DNA from: Anthoceros angustus
Lineage: Eukaryota > Plantae > Anthocerotophyta
Length of the DNA stretch: 64,000 bases
Direction: 5' to 3'
Assembly (NCBI GenBank): GCA_010909165.1
Contig: MU008170.1
Location: 620,001-684,000, forward strand
Shown here: in pieces, positions 19,700 through 25,742 of the stretch
Layout of the letters: every line of letters starts with the position of its first letter
Position numbering within the stretch: the first letter of the stretch is position 1
The notes under the pieces: model-generated
What the model was told of the DNA's origin: nothing
Seen by the model: the letters and a program-made list of their open reading frames with translations, nothing else
Database searches by the model: none
Translations under genes and position numbers: made by a program

Positions 19700-20830
19700 C
19701 CATTCAGGGTTCATATCTCGCGGAATTACATGGTTGGAGGATACGTGCACCAAGGGCTGCATCACCGGCTCTCGGAGCAATGACGAAAGAAGCTCACTTC
19801 CCGCGGCATTCTGAAAGCATGCTGAGGCCTGCCTCAAGGAATGTGATCCATGCTCAATCGTTGATGCGTTTACTGGGACCACTCTCATTCTGTTCTATGG
19901 CTCGTGCGGGTGCCTGGAGAAGGAGTGAAAGCCCTCGGTAGTGTGCGATTGAAGACGGTGGTGCTTTGGAATGCCATGATCTCAGTGGATGCTCTTGACC
20001 AGCACACGCAACCCAAGGGCTTGCTACCAAATTGGGTAACGTCCCTCAGGCACACCTACGATGGGTCATTCGCTCATGTCCAGAGACTGCACTGAAGATG
20101 GATGTGTTTGTAGGGATCACAGGATGTGCCATCAGCCAGGATGTGCCGACCTAGGCCACCCCGCACTTGCACCAAATGCAGCAATAGGGCTTTGCATTCA
20201 GACAAAGTCACTACCACGACAGTACGGCTGTAGGACGAAGCCGTGGAACTTCATGCACAAATCATGAACTCGGACACAGCGGCTGTCACCAACACCCTCA
20301 AAGATTGGTATCCCCATCTAATTGTAGCCTAGCGGATGCACAGTCAGACTCTGTAAGGCAAAGAGAGGCCTCATAGCCTGAAACATTGCACATCACACTG
20401 TCAGCACGGGGATCCTACCGCTGTTTCGCACAAAGCAGATGGCATGGGTGAGACCAGACCAACCCACAATCTGTATGTTTACTGTCGCCTGCGGTCTTTT
20501 GGGTTGTCAGGCCAAAGGTGCATGACTACTCCAATCAACGTCCTACATCCTACATGTGTGGCCGAGTCCGAGATATGGAGCCCTATTTTGCTGGCAGACC
20601 CTGCACAGGACTACTGTAACACCTCACCATGCGATGCCTATCCAATATCATAGACACTCCCGTGATTCTAATTGCAGATTCCAATAATCTTGCTCATCCG
20701 ATCATCCTATAATGGGTCCCGAAATGAGAGATTCAGACAAGCTGCTGTTCAAGAGAGCAACAGAGTATAAAGAGTACGAAGCTTCACAGAGGCCATCCCT
20801 GTTAGATGCTGGTTGAGCAGTCTGAGCAGA
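19700..20830 (+). pseudogene. Highly decayed PLS-PPR pseudogene
   Basis: Ordered fragments in shifting frames with stops: DAFTGTTLILFYGSCGCLE (S), KTVVLWNAMIS (P), KGLLPNWVT, QMQQ*G, AVELHAQIMNS (L), VTNTLKDWY..SLADAQ (S), LFRTKQMAWVRPDQPTICMFTVAC, and GRVRDMEPYF..QDYC (L2-like). Boundaries are approximate. Confidence 0.7.
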
Positions 20831-20890
20831 CCAGAACAGAGAGAGCTATGTACACTGTACACTTGCCACCGTTGATCAAACGTTGGTGTT

Positions 20891-21334
20891 TCACCGGTCG
20901 AAGGTGCCTTTCTCCCCAGGCACATCTCTACCTTGAATACGTGATACGATTCTGAAGTTGTTCCTTGTAAGAGGATTCAACACCACCGGCTTACTGTTAG
21001 CCACGGTCGGCCAGCCATTATCCATCTTCCACGCGGTTGCTTCGCTCCACTCCTTAGATAGTGTCCTAGGAACGGTTCCTGTTCTCAGCCAGGTTGGAAT
21101 CAATTGGAGTCACCAGGAACCTATACGTGCAGCTTGGATAAATTTTGAGCCCATAGAAAACATGCATCGTGGCTCCAGCTCCATGCACTCCCTGGTTCCA
21201 GCATGTAAATGGTCACATGAATGAAAGAAATGCTCACCGCCAAAGATCTTCCTGTTGCGAACGAGATCCCAGTAGATGTAGGACACGACGAGGGCTCCCG
21301 TAACGGACCCCACAATCAGCCTGGTTTGCCCCAT
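20891..21334 (-). CDS. Small single-TM protein, probable plant cytochrome c oxidase subunit 4-like; exons 21334-21238 and 21078-20891
   Basis: MGQTRLIVGSVTGALVVSYIYWDLVRNRKIFG|GTVPRTLSKEWSEATAWKMDNGWPTVANSKPVVLNPLTRNNF resembles a conserved plant family (KIFGGT.P.T...EW...WP...PVVMNPISRQNF). The P..T..EW..NP pattern is COX4-like. The gene model is solid; the COX4 identity is less certain. Confidence 0.7.
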
Positions 21335-21803
21335 GATCGCTGCCTTGTTGCTTCTCTTTTGTCAATTGCAAGGCTTAGGCACAGTTGGCTTTACATACAG
21401 ATGCCACGGTCACTGGGCTCAACCCCGGTTGATTCCGGATTTTGATTGTTTGATGCAGTCTGGCAGTGGTCCGAACATACCAATTCTGTAATGGCTGCAA
21501 GCAGCCAGCAGGAGAGAGCTCCTTGGGCCGATCTTACAACTCGCTTTTAGCAACTTCTACAACTGGCTGTGACAATTTATTTTCGCGAAGGTGATTGCAA
21601 CAACGAATTCTGGCAATGGGTGCACCCCATGTCACGACTGCCGGATTCCTCTTCGTCAGGGTCAGGAGCTGGATATGGATGTGGATGCCCTTGGCTCCTA
21701 ACATGGAACCCACGTGGAAGTGCAGCTGCCCAGAAAGCTTCGGGCTGAGGAGCTCAGGGTTCTGGGTTTTCCGTGTCCTACGGTATTTTCTATCGCCCAT
21801 AAA

Positions 21804-21813
21804 AACCGTTTGA
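21804..21813 (-). promoter_or_regulatory. MSA-like (mitosis-specific activator) element upstream of APC15/Borealin
   Basis: The minus strand reads TCAAACGGTT, one mismatch from YCYAACGGYY. It is a single copy, so support is weak. Confidence 0.3.
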
Positions 21814-21924
21814 ACAGCTACAAGACGAACAGCAACGAGGTGCTGGAAGCGAAGTGTTGCGAGACGTTGAAGCAGGCAGAGCTGAGAGCAGGAACAGGAG
21901 GAGGAGGAGGAGGAAGGCACGTTA

Positions 21925-22191
21925 ATGTTTCCCCGACTGCTACCGCCCACCGTCGACGACTCCTCGTACTGGCAGATCCAGGACAGCGATGAGGCCATTC
22001 TGGCGCAGCAGGAGTCCGAGCTGGATGAGAACTTCAACGAGATCAAGACAGCCTGCGATGGCATTGTAGTCATCGGCAAAATCCCGCCAGACAACGACCA
22101 GGACGAGTACGAGCCGGATGCGGAGGACAAGGAGGCCAACAATGTGGAGGAGGATAGCGATGCTGGAGAGTTCGATCAGGAGACAGGGTAG
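21925..22191 (+). CDS. APC15: Anaphase-promoting complex subunit 15 (88 aa)
   Basis: MFPRLLP..W...EAILAQQESELDENFNEIK...IVVIGK...acidic tail ending EFDQETG, matching plant APC15 (VVIGK...EFEQETG). An in-frame upstream stop supports ATG 21925. Confidence 0.85.
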   Translation: MFPRLLPPTVDDSSYWQIQDSDEAILAQQESELDENFNEIKTACDGIVVIGKIPPDNDQDEYEPDAEDKEANNVEEDSDAGEFDQETG

Positions 22192-22256
22192 ATAGGTAGG
22201 CTGGATGGAGCTGTAGTGGTGGTGGGTTGTGGCTCTCTGACAGAAGGAAGAAGAAG

Positions 22257-23423
22257 ATGGAGAAAGCGGGTGGCAAGAAGCGGGGGAGGCTCAGGAAGGG
22301 AGCCGATTCCTCCAGCTCCCCCGTGAAGGATGGGACGGCAGGAGCAGGAGCAGGGGAGGCTGGGGAGGCTGGGGGGCGGGTGACCAGGAAGCAGGCGGCC
22401 AGGAGAAGGCCGCTGGTGGATATGGATGCCAACCCGAGGGAGAAAGACCGGAGTGTAGGGCTTGCTGTGGGTTCGGGCAGGGCGACAAGGAGGACAAGGT
22501 TGGGGGACAAGCAGGCGAAGGAGGATGATGCCGTGAATGGAGATGGGCATGGAAAGCATGGAAACGGGGCTTGTTTGCATGCGATGGTGGAGATGGAGGA
22601 GGGCCGTTCTCCAATACCCAAGAAAGGGAAAGGCCGAAGAGCAGGGCAAGAGGGAGCTGCGGGGGAGGATGATGTTGTGGGAGAGAAGGCGGAGCTGTTG
22701 CCCAAGGACTCGGGCCGAGTGGACCCATCTGCTAGGCCTCCGCTCAAGGAGGTGCCAGGGCTTCCCTCCAACTACGAGGAGCGGCTGGAGTTGATCCGCC
22801 GGGTGAGCGAGTGCATCAACTCCGAGGTGGAGTTCCGTTGCGAGGCCCTCAAGGCCACGCTGGACATGCAGCTCCCGGCCGTGATGGCCCAGCTGAAGCT
22901 GCAGCAGGCCAAGTTCTCGGCAACCCAGCTCAGGATGCCGCTGGTGGAGTTTGTGGAAAAGTACTGCACCCATTGCGGGATCGGGGAGCGGGAGGACGGG
23001 TCCTTAGAGATTAGGAAGTTCGACAGAAGCATGGCTGGGGATGTCGGAGACGGATGGGCGGAAGGGCAGCAGCAGCAGGTGCAGGGAAATGTGGTTCCCA
23101 CTCCTGCCCCAGCCATGGCAGCTGCAGATTGCAGTGCAGAGAAATGGGCCACCAGAGGCCAGAAACGTGACCGACACAACGGGGACCTGTCGGAGATCAT
23201 GTCAGCCTACATCCAGGCATCTGCATCTCGAGACTTTGGTGCCCTCACCAGCCCTACCATGGCCACTCCCGCCACCTGGAGAAGAGGCAGCCTCTTCACA
23301 GGTCCGCCTCTCGCTGCTGCCCTGCAACCGTCCCGGTGTGGAGTCACTCCCAGGTCAGAGAGAAGGCCTCAGCGAGGAGAGATGCTCATGTCCGTCAATG
23401 GCTCGCCTCTTGGACACTACTGA
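22257..23423 (+). CDS. BORR: Borealin-related chromosomal passenger complex subunit (intronless)
   Basis: Borealin N-type helix (EVEFRCEALKATLDMQL...LKLQQAKFSATQLRMPLVEF) and the conserved C-terminal RRPQRGEMLMSVNGSPLGHY. Confidence 0.82.
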   Translation: MEKAGGKKRGRLRKGADSSSSPVKDGTAGAGAGEAGEAGGRVTRKQAARRRPLVDMDANPREKDRSVGLAVGSGRATRRTRLGDKQAKEDDAVNGDGHGKHGNGACLHAMVEMEEGRSPIPKKGKGRRAGQEGAAGEDDVVGEKAELLPKDSGRVDPSARPPLKEVPGLPSNYEERLELIRRVSECINSEVEFRCEALKATLDMQLPAVMAQLKLQQAKFSATQLRMPLVEFVEKYCTHCGIGEREDGSLEIRKFDRSMAGDVGDGWAEGQQQQVQGNVVPTPAPAMAAADCSAEKWATRGQKRDRHNGDLSEIMSAYIQASASRDFGALTSPTMATPATWRRGSLFTGPPLAAALQPSRCGVTPRSERRPQRGEMLMSVNGSPLGHY

Positions 23424-23854
23424 TAGACAGAAATAAAAGAAGAGAGAAGACAGCACGGCACACCACAGCATAGAATAGCACACCTTGTAGTCGTACGCAG
23501 ACGAGACATACCTCCCGCATGAGCCCACACACTCTTCTCGCAGATGGGTGTCTAGAATTTTTGTCCTCCCTATATATGTATGTATCGTCTATTCCTCTTG
23601 TCGACATGGAGACGACGACCCTTACTTCCTCAGCCCCGTCCATACAAGTTTGAAGAGCGTGGGACCTTCTGTTGTGGTCCATTCGCAGCCTTCTGCGCTC
23701 ACAATTCTTGTGAGGTAGTTTTCTCTTCCGTTGTCCTTGTTCCTAAAAACGACCCATAGTGCTTGGGCTTGAGCTTAAAAACAACCTACCCTCCCGTTTT
23801 CTCACAATTTGTTCACACAAGCAGTGAGCCTGTTAGCGCATTGTGAGCAGCAGC

Positions 23855-25252
23855 ATGGGTGTGGGCGGCGACGACAAAGCTGATATGCCTGGGCTGCCTG
23901 GAGTACCGCTTGACACTACAGCGGCCCAGCGCGAGATTTTGCTGCTCAAGGTGCCAACTGCGCTGGCTAAATTATGGCAGCAGCAGCGAGATGCAGGATC
24001 CACGGAGCCGCTGGCTCGGCTCACCTCCACCTGGGATCTGCTCAACCCCAATTCTCCTCCAGAGGTGCCATGAGAGATGCGACGTGCTATTGCAATTCTC
24101 GTTCTTTGGCAGCTATGTCGCGGCTTGTCTAGGTAGGGTTGTAGAGGTGAGCCAGACTTACGACGATGACCTCTCTCTGGACATGCTTGCATGCCGCAGT
24201 TTTCCATGGAGGTGCCCGGGAAGGATGGAGAGTTGCCAAAGAAGTATGTGCTCCCTGCGGCCAAGGACCCTGTGCCTATGTGCATTTTTACTGAGACAAC
24301 CGATGGTAATTGCGTTGCTGCCCATTTTTGATGAATTGTCATGCACCAGGGTGGTGGCACGCTGGTTGGCCCATGGCCATGGCCTGACCAAGTGGTGCTG
24401 AATGCAACTTTGGGGCCCTGTTCTGGTTAGGAGGGCAGCTCGCTTGAACACAACGAGTGCATATCCTGTGCAGGGAAACTTGCAGCGGAGGGAAGAGTGA
24501 AGTACAAATTTGACATGCAGCGGAGTGGCCAGGATCCTGATGAGTATCGTAAGATTTGCCGGGACAGGTTGACCAAGTCCATGGTTAAACCACGAACCCT
24601 ACAGGTTTGCAGCCTGGAGACCAGACCTCCTTCACCTTTTCCCTAATTGCTAGTCTGTGTATGTTAATGTGTTTCCTGGTTTTAGGTTCTGTCGGAGGAT
24701 GGTGGTAGGTATATGAGGCCACAACCGGGAACTTGGCATGCGGGTACAAAGGTACAGTGTGCTGACTCCCACTGAATAGGCTTTGCTTTCCATGCAGCAC
24801 CATCTGCAACTGCTCCTGCTGGTGAGAGAGTATTTTAACCAGCGTATGTTTTTCTTCTTAGGATAAGAAGAAGACCGTGGTGCCTGCAAAAGGTACTGAA
24901 GGGAAGCGGATTCGCGGAGATCGCACGCAGTTGGAAGACATGGTTTTCCAGCTGTTCGAGCAGACTCCTAATTGGGGATTGAAGAGCCTTACGCAGGCGA
25001 CTGCTCAGCCTGTGGTATGTAGTGTCCTCTGAATTCATGAACCCAATATCACAGCTTCTGCTATATGACTGGCATCCTAGACTAGTTCTCACAGGCGTTA
25101 ACTCTGTCTCCTGGCAGGCTTTCCTTAAAGAGGTTCTGAACGAACTCTGTATATACAACAAAAGGGGGCTCAATCAAGGCACATACGAACTCAAGCCGGA
25201 ATATAAGCGTATGGCGGCCGAGGCTGCTCCGGCTGCGCCACCCTCAGGATAG
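23855..25252 (+). CDS. General transcription factor IIF subunit beta (RAP30), 6 exons
   Basis: LDTTAAQREILLLKVP, GKLAAEGRVKYKFDMQ, and the winged helix DRTQLEDMVFQLFEQTPNWGLKSLTQATAQPV|AFLKEVLNELCIYNKRGLNQGTYELKPEYK. Confidence 0.93.
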
Positions 25253-25742
25253 AAGCTTGTTCACCCATCGGTGCTTGTCGGAGTATTTTTCCCAAGGTCG
25301 AAGGAGGACCTCCCTGACCACATCGAGAGGCGATCTTCCTCACCTTATGTACACCTCTATGTACCATAACAATGGCGATAAAGTCGCCTCCACGGATTCT
25401 TTTTACTTTGTAAATAGGTAGACCAACCCGAAAAGGTCGAAGGGGATTTCCACCCATTTTTGGCAGATTTTATCTTATTAATAATTACACTTAGAGTAAA
25501 GAATAACAGCACTGGTGAGATAAGATTCAAAAGAATGAAGCCTAGTTGGTGAGCTTGCCCTTGAGCCAAGGGTGGATAGCCAGGCTCAAGTGTGTGTGTA
25601 ATTTTTTGTGATTAAAAAGTAGCTTCTCAAGCTCGAGGCTTGTTGAGGAGGAAGAGTAGCTTCTTGAGGCTTTTCGAGGAGGTGGTTTGCGAAAAGTCAA
25701 TTGACGGCTGGCTACTTGGAGCCTACTCCTGCGTCGTGAGGT

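What the first reader, a model, noticed from the sequence alone, without database searches (positions are those of the whole stretch)
21925..23423. APC15 ORF 65 nt upstream of Borealin: candidate bicistronic or splice-fused mitotic transcript
Seen: APC15 stops at 22191 and the Borealin-related ATG is at 22257 on the same strand in a different frame, leaving no room for a terminator plus promoter. A possible GT-AG intron at 22188-22243 (56 nt) would remove the APC15 stop and fuse it in frame (..DQETG-RKKK-MEKAG..). A second donor at 22196 would only shorten the spacer. One MSA-like element lies upstream. Established: another APC/C subunit, CDC26, is translated from a bicistronic mRNA with TTM3 in plants; APC15 and the chromosomal passenger complex both act in spindle-checkpoint control. 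Inference: an operon-like coupling of the APC/C and the CPC.
Basis: partly seen in the sequence, partly recalled or inferred. Interest (0 to 1): 0.8.

Follow-up and report, generated by a model that had tools for sequence, protein, structure and literature searches.

The report
Probable APC15–Borealin two-protein mRNA
In this seedless land plant two cell-division genes, APC15 and a Borealin relative, lie 65 bases apart and RNA runs unspliced across the gap, so they most likely share one messenger RNA that gives two separate proteins rather than a spliced fusion, though long-read proof is missing.

Summary
ORF1 (21925-22191, 88 aa) is a full-length APC15 (Pfam PF15243, 37.9 bits, cut-off 27). 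ORF2 (22257-23423, 388 aa) belongs to the Borealin family, shown through a profile search, not by its own Pfam score. They share a strand, sit in different frames and are 65 nt apart.

RNA-derived contigs of one public run cover 22099-22282 without a gap. That stretch includes the APC15 stop, the whole spacer and the ORF2 ATG. This holds for the window's copy and for an expressed copy about 92% alike. No 22187^22244 joint was seen. The proposed 56-nt intron is shorter and far more G-rich than six confirmed local introns. A relative (L001) keeps the pair only 35 nt apart, too short for an intron.

So splice fusion is not supported, and a bicistronic mRNA is the best reading (about 0.6). It is not proven. 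Contigs cannot show single molecules, and a contig also bridges ORF2 to the next gene. ATGs upstream of ORF2 are not depleted, unlike in algal leaky-scanning loci.

Four other plant genomes lack the linkage. APC15 already sits on a bicistronic mRNA in Chlamydomonas, with another partner. The scan noted the same arrangement before on other DNA (paralogue, s1-680240). I rate it a new member of a known kind.

The parts
21806..21810 (-). MSA-like core (AACGG on the minus strand), 119 nt upstream of the APC15 ATG. It is the only such core between 21400 and the ORF2 ATG.
   Evidence: L001 has two cores 107 and 122 nt upstream of its APC15 ATG, and none inside ORF1 or the spacer. A 5-mer match is weak evidence taken alone.
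21679..21924 (+). Stretch in which RNA coverage begins (5' leader). It contains a (GGA)n run at about 21897-21916.
   Evidence: table 2: depth is zero over 20694-21678, 3.2 in bin 21679-21875 and 29.6 from 21876. The exact 5' end is not resolved, because these are contigs and the repeat at 21883-21921 was skipped.
21925..22191 (+). ORF1: APC15 (anaphase-promoting complex subunit 15), 88 aa, intronless. Start context ttaATGt is weak.
   Evidence: Pfam PF15243 scores 37.9 bits against a cut-off of 27 and covers model positions 3-88 of 90. The nearest Atlas clusters are streptophyte APC15 of 96-99 aa. It is 77% identical to P0001. Listed differences to the 92% copy: 7 of 11 changed codons are synonymous.
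22192..22256 (+). 65-nt inter-ORF spacer. It is G-rich, has no AATAAA-like signal, and holds one out-of-frame ATG (22205) whose 3-codon ORF ends at 22216.
   Evidence: It is transcribed: X1 contig record 1 covers 22099-22282 with no differences, and record 2 (92% copy) is collinear without gaps. It has no unusual fold (z 0.76).
22188..22243 (+). Not supported.
   Evidence: It is 56 nt and 45% G, against six RNA-confirmed introns of 81-168 nt and 15-32% G. RNA contigs of both copies retain it. L001's spacer is only 35 nt.
22257..23423 (+). ORF2: Borealin-related protein (BORR-like), 388 aa, intronless. Start context aagATGg is strong.
   Evidence: It is 41% identical (E 1e-71) to L001 ORF2. A profile of the two finds 57 proteins. 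Of 43 aligned sequences, 28 match PF10512 Borealin and 9 match PF10444 at E up to 0.01. Three checked singly pass the curated cut-offs. Atlas neighbours are all Borealin clusters. The 92% copy differs mostly at synonymous sites.
22404..22433 (+). Conserved N-terminal motif R-R-P-L-x-D-x-x-A-N (aa 50-59), also present in L001 and, as R-x-P-L-x5-N, in several BORR homologues.
   Evidence: by direct reading. It resembles a D-box with the N one residue further on. Its function is not tested.
22767..23012 (+). Helical region equivalent to Nbl1/Borealin_N, the part that in Borealin packs with INCENP and Survivin.
   Evidence: Profile positions 24-110 of A1 align to the PF10444 stretches of P0007 (37.8 bits) and P0018 (26.3 bits). 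AlphaFold2 predicts a helix at residues 24-69 of the modelled part, with pLDDT above 90.
23340..23420 (+). C-terminal Borealin motif (...TPR..RRPQRGEMLMSVNGSPLG..) with the conserved SP site.
   Evidence: It carries the same motif as the C-termini of dozens of plant homologues. Those stretches match PF10512. The protein's own weak PF10512 hit falls at aa 359-386.
23432..23437 (+). The only AATAAA between 21900 and 23800, 9 nt after the ORF2 stop. It is the likely poly(A) signal of the unit.
   Evidence: Likeness to the 92% copy ends at 23440 (table 7).

Best explanation
APC15 and the Borealin-related gene form one transcription unit. A promoter upstream of 21925, carrying an MSA-like G2/M element, drives an intronless mRNA. 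That mRNA contains the 88-codon APC15 ORF, a 65-nt spacer and the 388-codon BORR ORF, and ends after the AATAAA at 23432. Two separate proteins are made. APC15 starts at a weak-context AUG. BORR starts at its own strong-context AUG and is reached by ribosomes that either skip the APC15 AUG or resume scanning after termination. What is shown: both ORFs are real family members under purifying selection, RNA is continuous and unspliced across stop, spacer and ORF2 ATG in two copies, and the arrangement is conserved in a divergent relative. What is inferred: that one molecule carries both ORFs, where its ends lie, and how ORF2 is translated.
For: (1) Families: APC15 above cut-off; ORF2 in the Borealin family.
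(2) Run X1 is RNA-derived. Its contigs skip six GT..AG introns of the downstream gene and give zero depth over 20694-21678. Contig record 1 covers 22099-22282 exactly, and record 2 does the same for the 92% copy, without gaps. No joint lies in the spacer.
(3) Contig depths are flat along the unit. The exact copy reads 16.2 (ORF1), 16.4 (junction) and 13.5 (ORF2 body). The 92% copy reads 18.9, 17.9 and 17.8. Depth jumps to 63.8 only at the next gene. This is suggestive only.
(4) No AATAAA-like signal lies between 21900 and 23431. The only one is 9 nt after the ORF2 stop.
(5) L001 has APC15 (77% identical) followed after 35 nt by the ORF2 homologue (41% identical), in the same +2 frame offset. 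APC15 ends at the same ...QETG and ORF2 has the same kind of basic N-terminus.
(6) Start contexts are weak then strong in both species: ttaATGt then aagATGg in the window, ggtATGt then gggATGg in L001.
(7) MSA-like cores lie only upstream of APC15, at a similar distance in both species.
(8) Precedents exist. A putative APC15 is one cistron of a bicistronic locus in Chlamydomonas (Cre12.g513245/Cre12.g513254; PMC7896298). CDC26, another small APC/C subunit, is encoded upstream of TTM3 on a bicistronic plant mRNA (PMC7943633).
Against: Contigs are built from 31-letter overlaps, so two overlapping transcripts would give the same picture. In the same run a contig also joins the ORF2 3' end to the spliced TFIIF-beta gene, so continuity arises here between units that are probably separate.

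The contigs leave a hole at 22283-22388. The junction contig is therefore not physically linked to the ORF2 body.

ATGs upstream of ORF2 are not depleted. Observed over expected is 1.42 in the window and 0.74 in L001, against 0.43-0.49 in algal bicistronic loci (PMC11291117). NAT-G codon pairs are not avoided.

An 88-codon ORF1 is long for efficient reinitiation. No long reads, end mapping or ribosome data could be checked. L001 looks like genomic DNA, so it shows synteny and not a transcript.
Confidence: 0.6

Rival explanations
1. There are two overlapping but independent mRNAs. The APC15 transcript ends somewhere inside the 5' part of ORF2. BORR is made mainly from a shorter mRNA whose start site lies inside the APC15 coding region or the spacer. 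Any bicistronic molecules are a minor by-product of tight gene packing.
For: Contig continuity cannot tell one molecule from two (tool caveat). The same run gives a contig from the ORF2 3' end into the next gene, so overlap or read-through between neighbours occurs here. Four to seven out-of-frame ATGs precede ORF2, with no depletion, which would make translation from a bicistronic mRNA inefficient. A short pyrimidine run (CTCTCT, 22234-22239) lies in the spacer. Contigs leave a hole at 22283-22388.
Against: No poly(A) signal lies after APC15. The 35-nt spacer in L001 and 65-nt spacers in two copies have been kept while ORF2 diverged to 41% identity. Depth is flat across ORF1, junction and ORF2 in both copies, in contrast to the step at the next gene. 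MSA-like cores lie only upstream of APC15. A start site in the spacer would leave a leader under 65 nt.
Confidence: 0.3
2. Splice fusion: removal of 22188-22243 deletes the APC15 stop and yields one APC15-Borealin fusion protein as a significant product.
For: GT and AG are in place and the join is in frame. Contigs drop rare variants, so a minor isoform cannot be excluded (tool caveat).
Against: RNA contigs of both copies retain the stretch and no joint is reported. The candidate is 56 nt and 45% G, against 81-168 nt and 15-32% G for six confirmed introns. Its CTGAC lies only 2 nt from the AG. L001's 35-nt spacer cannot be an intron. The APC15 C-terminus and the BORR N-terminus are each conserved as free ends. 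Streptophyte APC15 clusters are stand-alone proteins of 96-99 aa.
Confidence: 0.04

Closest known systems
CDC26-TTM3 bicistronic mRNA of plants (Lorenzo-Orts et al. 2019, Nat Plants 5:184, as summarised in PMC7943633 and PMC11062462)
   Same: A small APC/C accessory subunit is encoded as the first ORF of an mRNA whose second, larger ORF encodes another protein. The arrangement is conserved between species.
   Different: The subunit here is APC15, not CDC26. The partner is a mitotic protein (Borealin-related), not a metabolic enzyme. The range is narrow: the linkage is absent from four other plant genomes, whereas CDC26-TTM3 is reported as conserved in the plant kingdom. Here the single transcript is inferred, not demonstrated.
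Chlamydomonas bicistronic locus Cre12.g513245 (putative APC15) / Cre12.g513254 (metallo-beta-lactamase) and algal bicistronic loci in general (PMC7896298; PMC11291117)
   Same: APC15 is a cistron of a two-ORF mRNA. ORF1 is small, the inter-ORF distance is short, the ORFs are in different frames, and the start context is weak for ORF1 and stronger for ORF2.
   Different: The partner differs. The organism is a land plant. The ATG depletion upstream of ORF2 that marks algal leaky-scanning loci is not seen here. The algal loci rest on Iso-Seq and proteomics, and this one rests on short-read contigs.
Arabidopsis BOREALIN-RELATED, AT4G39630 (bioRxiv 10.1101/2020.03.19.998880)
   Same: It has an N-terminal helix region and a C-terminal conserved stretch with the CDK-type SP site. 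It has a basic N-terminus.
   Different: Arabidopsis BORR is 233 aa. The Borealin genes of the four other plant genomes checked here are split by introns (L002-L005). ORF2 here is 388 aa, with about 120 extra residues between the N-terminal motif and the helix. It is intronless and sits directly behind APC15.
Read-through (polycistronic-like) transcripts between neighbouring Arabidopsis genes (PMC9768141)
   Same: RNA is continuous over two same-strand neighbours, as seen here also between ORF2 and TFIIF-beta.
   Different: By that paper's abstract, read-through transcripts accumulate in NMD-deficient mutants. Here the spacing is conserved across species and across a duplication, and no separate terminator signal is present.

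Membership tests
ANAPC15 (Pfam PF15243) | Sequence reaches the family's curated score over the whole domain | tested here: met
   It scores 37.9 bits against a cut-off of 27. Residues 1-84 cover model positions 3-88 of 90. Atlas neighbours are streptophyte APC15 clusters at score 0.95.
ANAPC15 (Pfam PF15243) | Association with the APC/C and a role in MCC turnover | not testable with these tools
   This needs biochemistry or genetics.
Borealin / BORR (PF10444 + PF10512) | Own sequence reaches the Pfam cut-off for either domain | tested here: not met
   PF10512 scores 11.8 bits (cut-off 19.5, E 0.27) at aa 359-386. There is no PF10444 hit.
Borealin / BORR (PF10444 + PF10512) | Profile-level homology of both regions to proteins that do reach the cut-offs | tested here: met
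   The profile of window plus L001 finds 57 proteins, down to E 2e-20 beyond the self-match to L001's own protein. Of 43 aligned sequences, 28 match PF10512 and 9 match PF10444 at E up to 0.01. P0007 PF10444 scores 37.8 bits at 140-188, inside the stretch aligned to the query helix region. P0018 scores 26.3 bits. P0003 PF10512 scores 24.3 bits.
Borealin / BORR (PF10444 + PF10512) | C-terminal conserved stretch with the ..GE.L.S..GSPLG.. site (CDK-type SP) | tested here: met
   Direct reading of ORF2, L001 and the homologues' C-termini. The motif is described for BORR in 10.1101/2020.03.19.998880.
Borealin / BORR (PF10444 + PF10512) | Fold match to solved Borealin; binding to INCENP and the Survivin-like partner | tested here: inconclusive
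   The model has a confident long helix, but Foldseek on the PDB gives nothing at E below 1. PDB sequence and profile searches do not reach Borealin. Binding is not testable.
Bicistronic nuclear mRNA of the green lineage | Both ORFs on one capped, polyadenylated molecule | tested here: inconclusive
   RNA contigs are continuous and unspliced over 22099-22282 in two copies. Contigs cannot show single molecules, and there is a hole at 22283-22388.
Bicistronic nuclear mRNA of the green lineage | Small ORF1, short inter-ORF distance, colinearity conserved in another species | tested here: met
   ORF1 is 88 aa. Spacers are 65 nt (two copies) and 35 nt in L001.
Bicistronic nuclear mRNA of the green lineage | Weak ORF1 start context, stronger ORF2 context | tested here: met
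   Window: position -3 is T and +4 is T for ORF1, against -3 A and +4 G for ORF2. L001: +4 is T for ORF1, against -3 G and +4 G for ORF2. Only two species were compared.
Bicistronic nuclear mRNA of the green lineage | Depletion of ATG upstream of ORF2 (leaky-scanning signature) | tested here: not met
   Observed over expected is 1.42 in the window and 0.74 in L001. Synonymous shuffles show no depletion. The algal medians are 0.43-0.49.
Splice-fused gene | Junction present in RNA; intron of normal size and composition; fusion conserved | tested here: not met
   No joint is seen. The candidate is 56 nt and 45% G, against 81-168 nt and 15-32% G. L001's 35-nt spacer rules out an intron there.

The most novel reading that the evidence does not exclude
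An obligately bicistronic APC15-BORR mRNA that has been kept since two deeply diverged lineages split and through a local duplication. Its second cistron would be translated by something other than the algal leaky-scanning rule, given no ATG depletion and an 88-codon first ORF, for example efficient termination-reinitiation or hopping over short out-of-frame ORFs. This would tie the dosage of an APC/C checkpoint-silencing subunit to that of the chromosomal passenger scaffold.
Probability: 0.15. Interest if true: 0.75.

Novelty: new member of a known kind. Interest (0 to 1): 0.55.

Why it matters
Conserved two-protein nuclear mRNAs are still rare in land plants, and CDC26-TTM3 is the textbook case. 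A second APC/C accessory subunit sitting in front of another protein's ORF, this time a mitotic partner, would suggest that very small subunits tend to end up as first cistrons. It would give a natural system in a bryophyte-grade plant for studying how a long first ORF with internal AUGs still lets the second ORF be translated. It would also offer a test of whether co-transcription fixes the ratio of APC/C and CPC components. For annotation it matters directly: gene finders will either miss the 88-aa APC15 or fuse it wrongly to Borealin.

Tried and rejected
(1) Word-index protein searches with ORF2, both whole and restricted to residues 170-388, found nothing. The exhaustive profile search was needed.

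(2) PDB sequence and profile searches did not reach Borealin. The only hits were a chance FRP-like protein and a primase.

(3) Structure prediction plus Foldseek against the PDB was uninformative, because the confident part is essentially one long helix.

(4) Exact-sequence look-ups of the window's own APC15 and ORF2 found no record, so no further contigs of this species were obtained. P0003 and P0041 have no record, and P0017's file was too large.

(5) Spacer folding showed no unusual stability (z 0.76 and -0.83), so an IRES-like or hairpin element is not supported.

(6) A TGGGA (TURBS-like) word abuts the ORF2 ATG in L001 but is not present in the window's spacer. I dropped it.

(7) All internal ATGs lie in frame +1 and their short ORFs end before the ORF2 ATG. 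I considered this a designed reinitiation path and rejected it as evidence. It follows from Asp-Glu/Gly codon pairs in an acidic protein, and a stop is expected within the spacer by chance.

(8) The joined (spliced) APC15-Borealin model was not built or searched, as the operators' rule requires. The TFIIF-beta gene was scanned exon by exon by reference only.

It only skipped the (GGA)n repeat at 21883-21921.

(10) Run X2, the second listed, laid nothing.

Full report
**Observation.** An ATG ORF runs 21925-22191 on the + strand (88 aa, TAG at 22189-22191). After a 65-nt spacer a second ATG at 22257 opens a 388-codon ORF that ends at 23423, in the frame offset by +2. GT at 22188 and AG at 22243 are present, and removing those 56 nt would join the two ORFs in frame. 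An AACGG core on the minus strand lies at 21806-21810, 119 nt before the first ATG.

**What the two ORFs are.**
- ORF1 is a full-length APC15. Pfam PF15243 scores 37.9 bits against a cut-off of 27 and covers model positions 3-88 of 90. Its nearest Atlas clusters are stand-alone streptophyte APC15 proteins of 96-99 aa.
- ORF2 does not reach a Pfam threshold by itself (PF10512, E 0.27, at its C-terminus). The two word-index searches were blank.
- A profile of ORF2 and its one close relative, searched exhaustively, found 57 proteins. Most are 220-300 aa and match in two stretches.
- Of 43 aligned sequences, 28 match PF10512 Borealin and 9 match PF10444 Nbl1_Borealin_N at E up to 0.01. Of six scanned singly, three pass the curated cut-offs: P0007 at 37.8 bits, P0018 at 26.3 bits and P0003 at 24.3 bits. 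These matches fall exactly in the stretches aligned to ORF2.
- The C-terminal motif (..GE.L.S.NGSPLG..) is the hallmark stretch described for Arabidopsis BORR. It is visible in ORF2 and in the homologues. Atlas neighbours are all Borealin clusters.
- ORF2 is therefore a Borealin-related protein, with about 120 extra residues between a conserved N-terminal motif and the helix. The structure model gave a confident long helix, but fold searches were uninformative.

**RNA evidence.**
- One public run (X1) holds the stretch. It is RNA-derived: its contigs skip six GT..AG introns of the downstream gene and give zero depth over the 985 nt upstream of the unit.
- A 184-nt contig matches 22099-22282 exactly. 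That covers the last 90 nt of APC15, its stop, the entire spacer and the first 26 nt of ORF2, unspliced.
- A second contig, 92% alike, covers the same interval without gaps. It probably comes from the paralogous APC15-Borealin locus that the scan noted 16 kb before this window (s1-680240). No joint 22187^22244 was reported.
- The listed differences of the 92% copy are mostly synonymous in both ORFs. They keep the stop codon and the ORF2 ATG. Both copies are therefore expressed and constrained genes.
- Contig depths are flat along each copy: 16.2, 16.4 and 13.5 for the exact copy, and 18.9, 17.9 and 17.8 for the other. Depth jumps to 63.8 only in the contig that contains the next gene. I treat this as suggestive only.

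**Limits of that evidence.** Contigs are assembled from short overlaps and cannot show that one molecule carries both ORFs. The same run yields a contig that joins the ORF2 3' end (23192-23712) to the spliced TFIIF-beta gene, so continuity also arises between units that are probably separate. The contigs leave a hole at 22283-22388, a stretch of short GGAGCAGG/GGGGAGGCTG repeats.

**Splice fusion.** This reading is not supported. Besides the unspliced contigs, the candidate intron is 56 nt with 45% G. The six RNA-confirmed introns next door are 81-168 nt with 15-32% G. Its only branch-like CTGAC lies 2 nt from the AG.

**Comparative evidence.**
- The only close APC15 relative in the word-indexed collection (P0001, 77% identical) lies on a 3-kb Logan contig, L001. 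Its APC15 (732-1004) is followed after 35 nt by a 393-aa ORF that is 41% identical to ORF2 (E 1e-71).
- Thirty-five nucleotides cannot be an intron and leave no room for a terminator plus promoter.
- APC15 ends at the same ...QETG in both species. ORF2 begins in both with the short basic N-terminus typical of plant BORR proteins. This argues for two free-standing proteins.
- L001 ends in what looks like the 5' half of a tRNA gene and has 730 nt of non-coding sequence upstream. ARAGORN called no tRNA in it. It is probably genomic DNA, so it shows synteny and not a transcript.
- The linkage is not general. Borealin loci in four other plant genomes (L002-L005) have introns and no APC15 within 4 kb upstream. 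One of them is GCA_000002425.3, a moss by my memory. Moss transcript contigs (L006, L007) carry Borealin without APC15.

**Signals.** The only AATAAA between 21900 and 23800 is at 23432, 9 nt after the ORF2 stop. MSA-like cores occur upstream of APC15 at similar distances in both species (119 nt; 107 and 122 nt) and not inside ORF1 or the spacer. A 5-mer is weak evidence on its own.

**Mechanism.**
- Start contexts fit leaky scanning in both species, with ORF1 weak and ORF2 strong. This is as in algal bicistronic loci (PMC11291117).
- The second algal signature fails. ATGs upstream of ORF2 are not depleted: observed over expected is 1.42 and 0.74, against 0.43-0.49 in algae. ATG-creating NAT-G codon pairs are not avoided.
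- All 7 (window) and 4 (L001) internal ATGs are in frame +1, and their short ORFs end before the ORF2 ATG. This follows largely from the acidic composition.
- The spacer has no unusual fold.
- How ORF2 is translated therefore remains open. The options are mixed leaky scanning and reinitiation, or a share of monocistronic BORR mRNA from an internal start site.

**Comparison with what is known.**
- CDC26, another tiny APC/C subunit, is encoded upstream of TTM3 on a conserved plant bicistronic mRNA (PMC7943633; PMC11062462).
- Gallaher et al. list a Chlamydomonas bicistronic locus in which Cre12.g513245 is a putative APC15 and its partner is a metallo-beta-lactamase (PMC7896298).
- No paper in the library links APC15 with Borealin, or reports nuclear bicistronic mRNAs in hornworts.
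- Other notes of this scan report further candidate bicistronic loci with small first ORFs in the same genome. I did not test them.

**Verdict.** The bicistronic reading is the best supported (about 0.6). Independent overlapping transcripts remain a serious rival (about 0.3). Splice fusion is unlikely (about 0.04). This is a new member of a known kind: a new cistron pair, restricted to one lineage, in a land plant. That the organism is a hornwort is the scan's guess. I only established a streptophyte affinity, from the APC15 Atlas clusters and from a sub-threshold DUF1138 match, a family I know as plant-specific.

Noticed in passing
window 23192-25445: An RNA contig joins the ORF2 3' end and 3'UTR to the downstream TFIIF-beta-like gene (ATG 23855). 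A 110-nt intron (23715-23824) is spliced out of that gene's 5' leader. At most about 290 nt separate the ORF2 stop from the end of the next gene's first exon, so the transcripts overlap or read through. Depth rises from about 13-24 to 63.8.
   Followed up: partly
window 21965-22282 and 23129-23440: A second expressed copy about 92% alike is present in the RNA run. It is probably the paralogue noted 16 kb before the window. Likeness stops at 23440, 17 nt after the ORF2 stop and 3 nt after the AATAAA. If the 5' limit matches the transcription start, it could be a retrocopy of the two-ORF mRNA.
   Followed up: partly
window 22257-23423; L001 1040-2221; L002-L005: The Borealin-related gene is intronless here and in L001. 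It is split by introns in four other plant genomes (1.9-2.9 kb for 271-364 aa). Intron loss may coincide with its arrival behind APC15. One possibility is retroposition into the APC15 3'UTR, which would also avoid exon-junction-dependent decay after ORF1 termination. This is speculation.
   Followed up: no
window 22404-22433 (ORF2 aa 50-59): The motif R-R-P-L-x-D-x-x-A-N is conserved in L001. As R-x-P-L-x5-N it occurs near the N-terminus of several Borealin homologues (P0006, P0013, P0017, P0053). It looks like a destruction box with the N one residue further on than the consensus. A possible APC/C degron in a protein encoded behind an APC/C subunit would be worth a test.
   Followed up: no
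window 21110-21334 (- strand): The first exon of a DUF1138-like small membrane protein (28.5 bits, below the cut-off for this exon alone) is divergent from APC15, with 590 nt between the two ATGs. It has zero RNA depth in run X1.
   Followed up: no
window 21897-21916 and 22283-22388: A (GGA)n run sits directly before the APC15 ATG. GGAGCAGG/GGGGAGGCTG short repeats lie in the 5' part of ORF2. Both break or escape the RNA contigs.
   Followed up: no
L001 2999-3028: The contig ends in a sequence that looks like the 5' half of a tRNA gene. ARAGORN does not call it, presumably because it is cut off. This is my reason for taking L001 as genomic DNA.
   Followed up: partly
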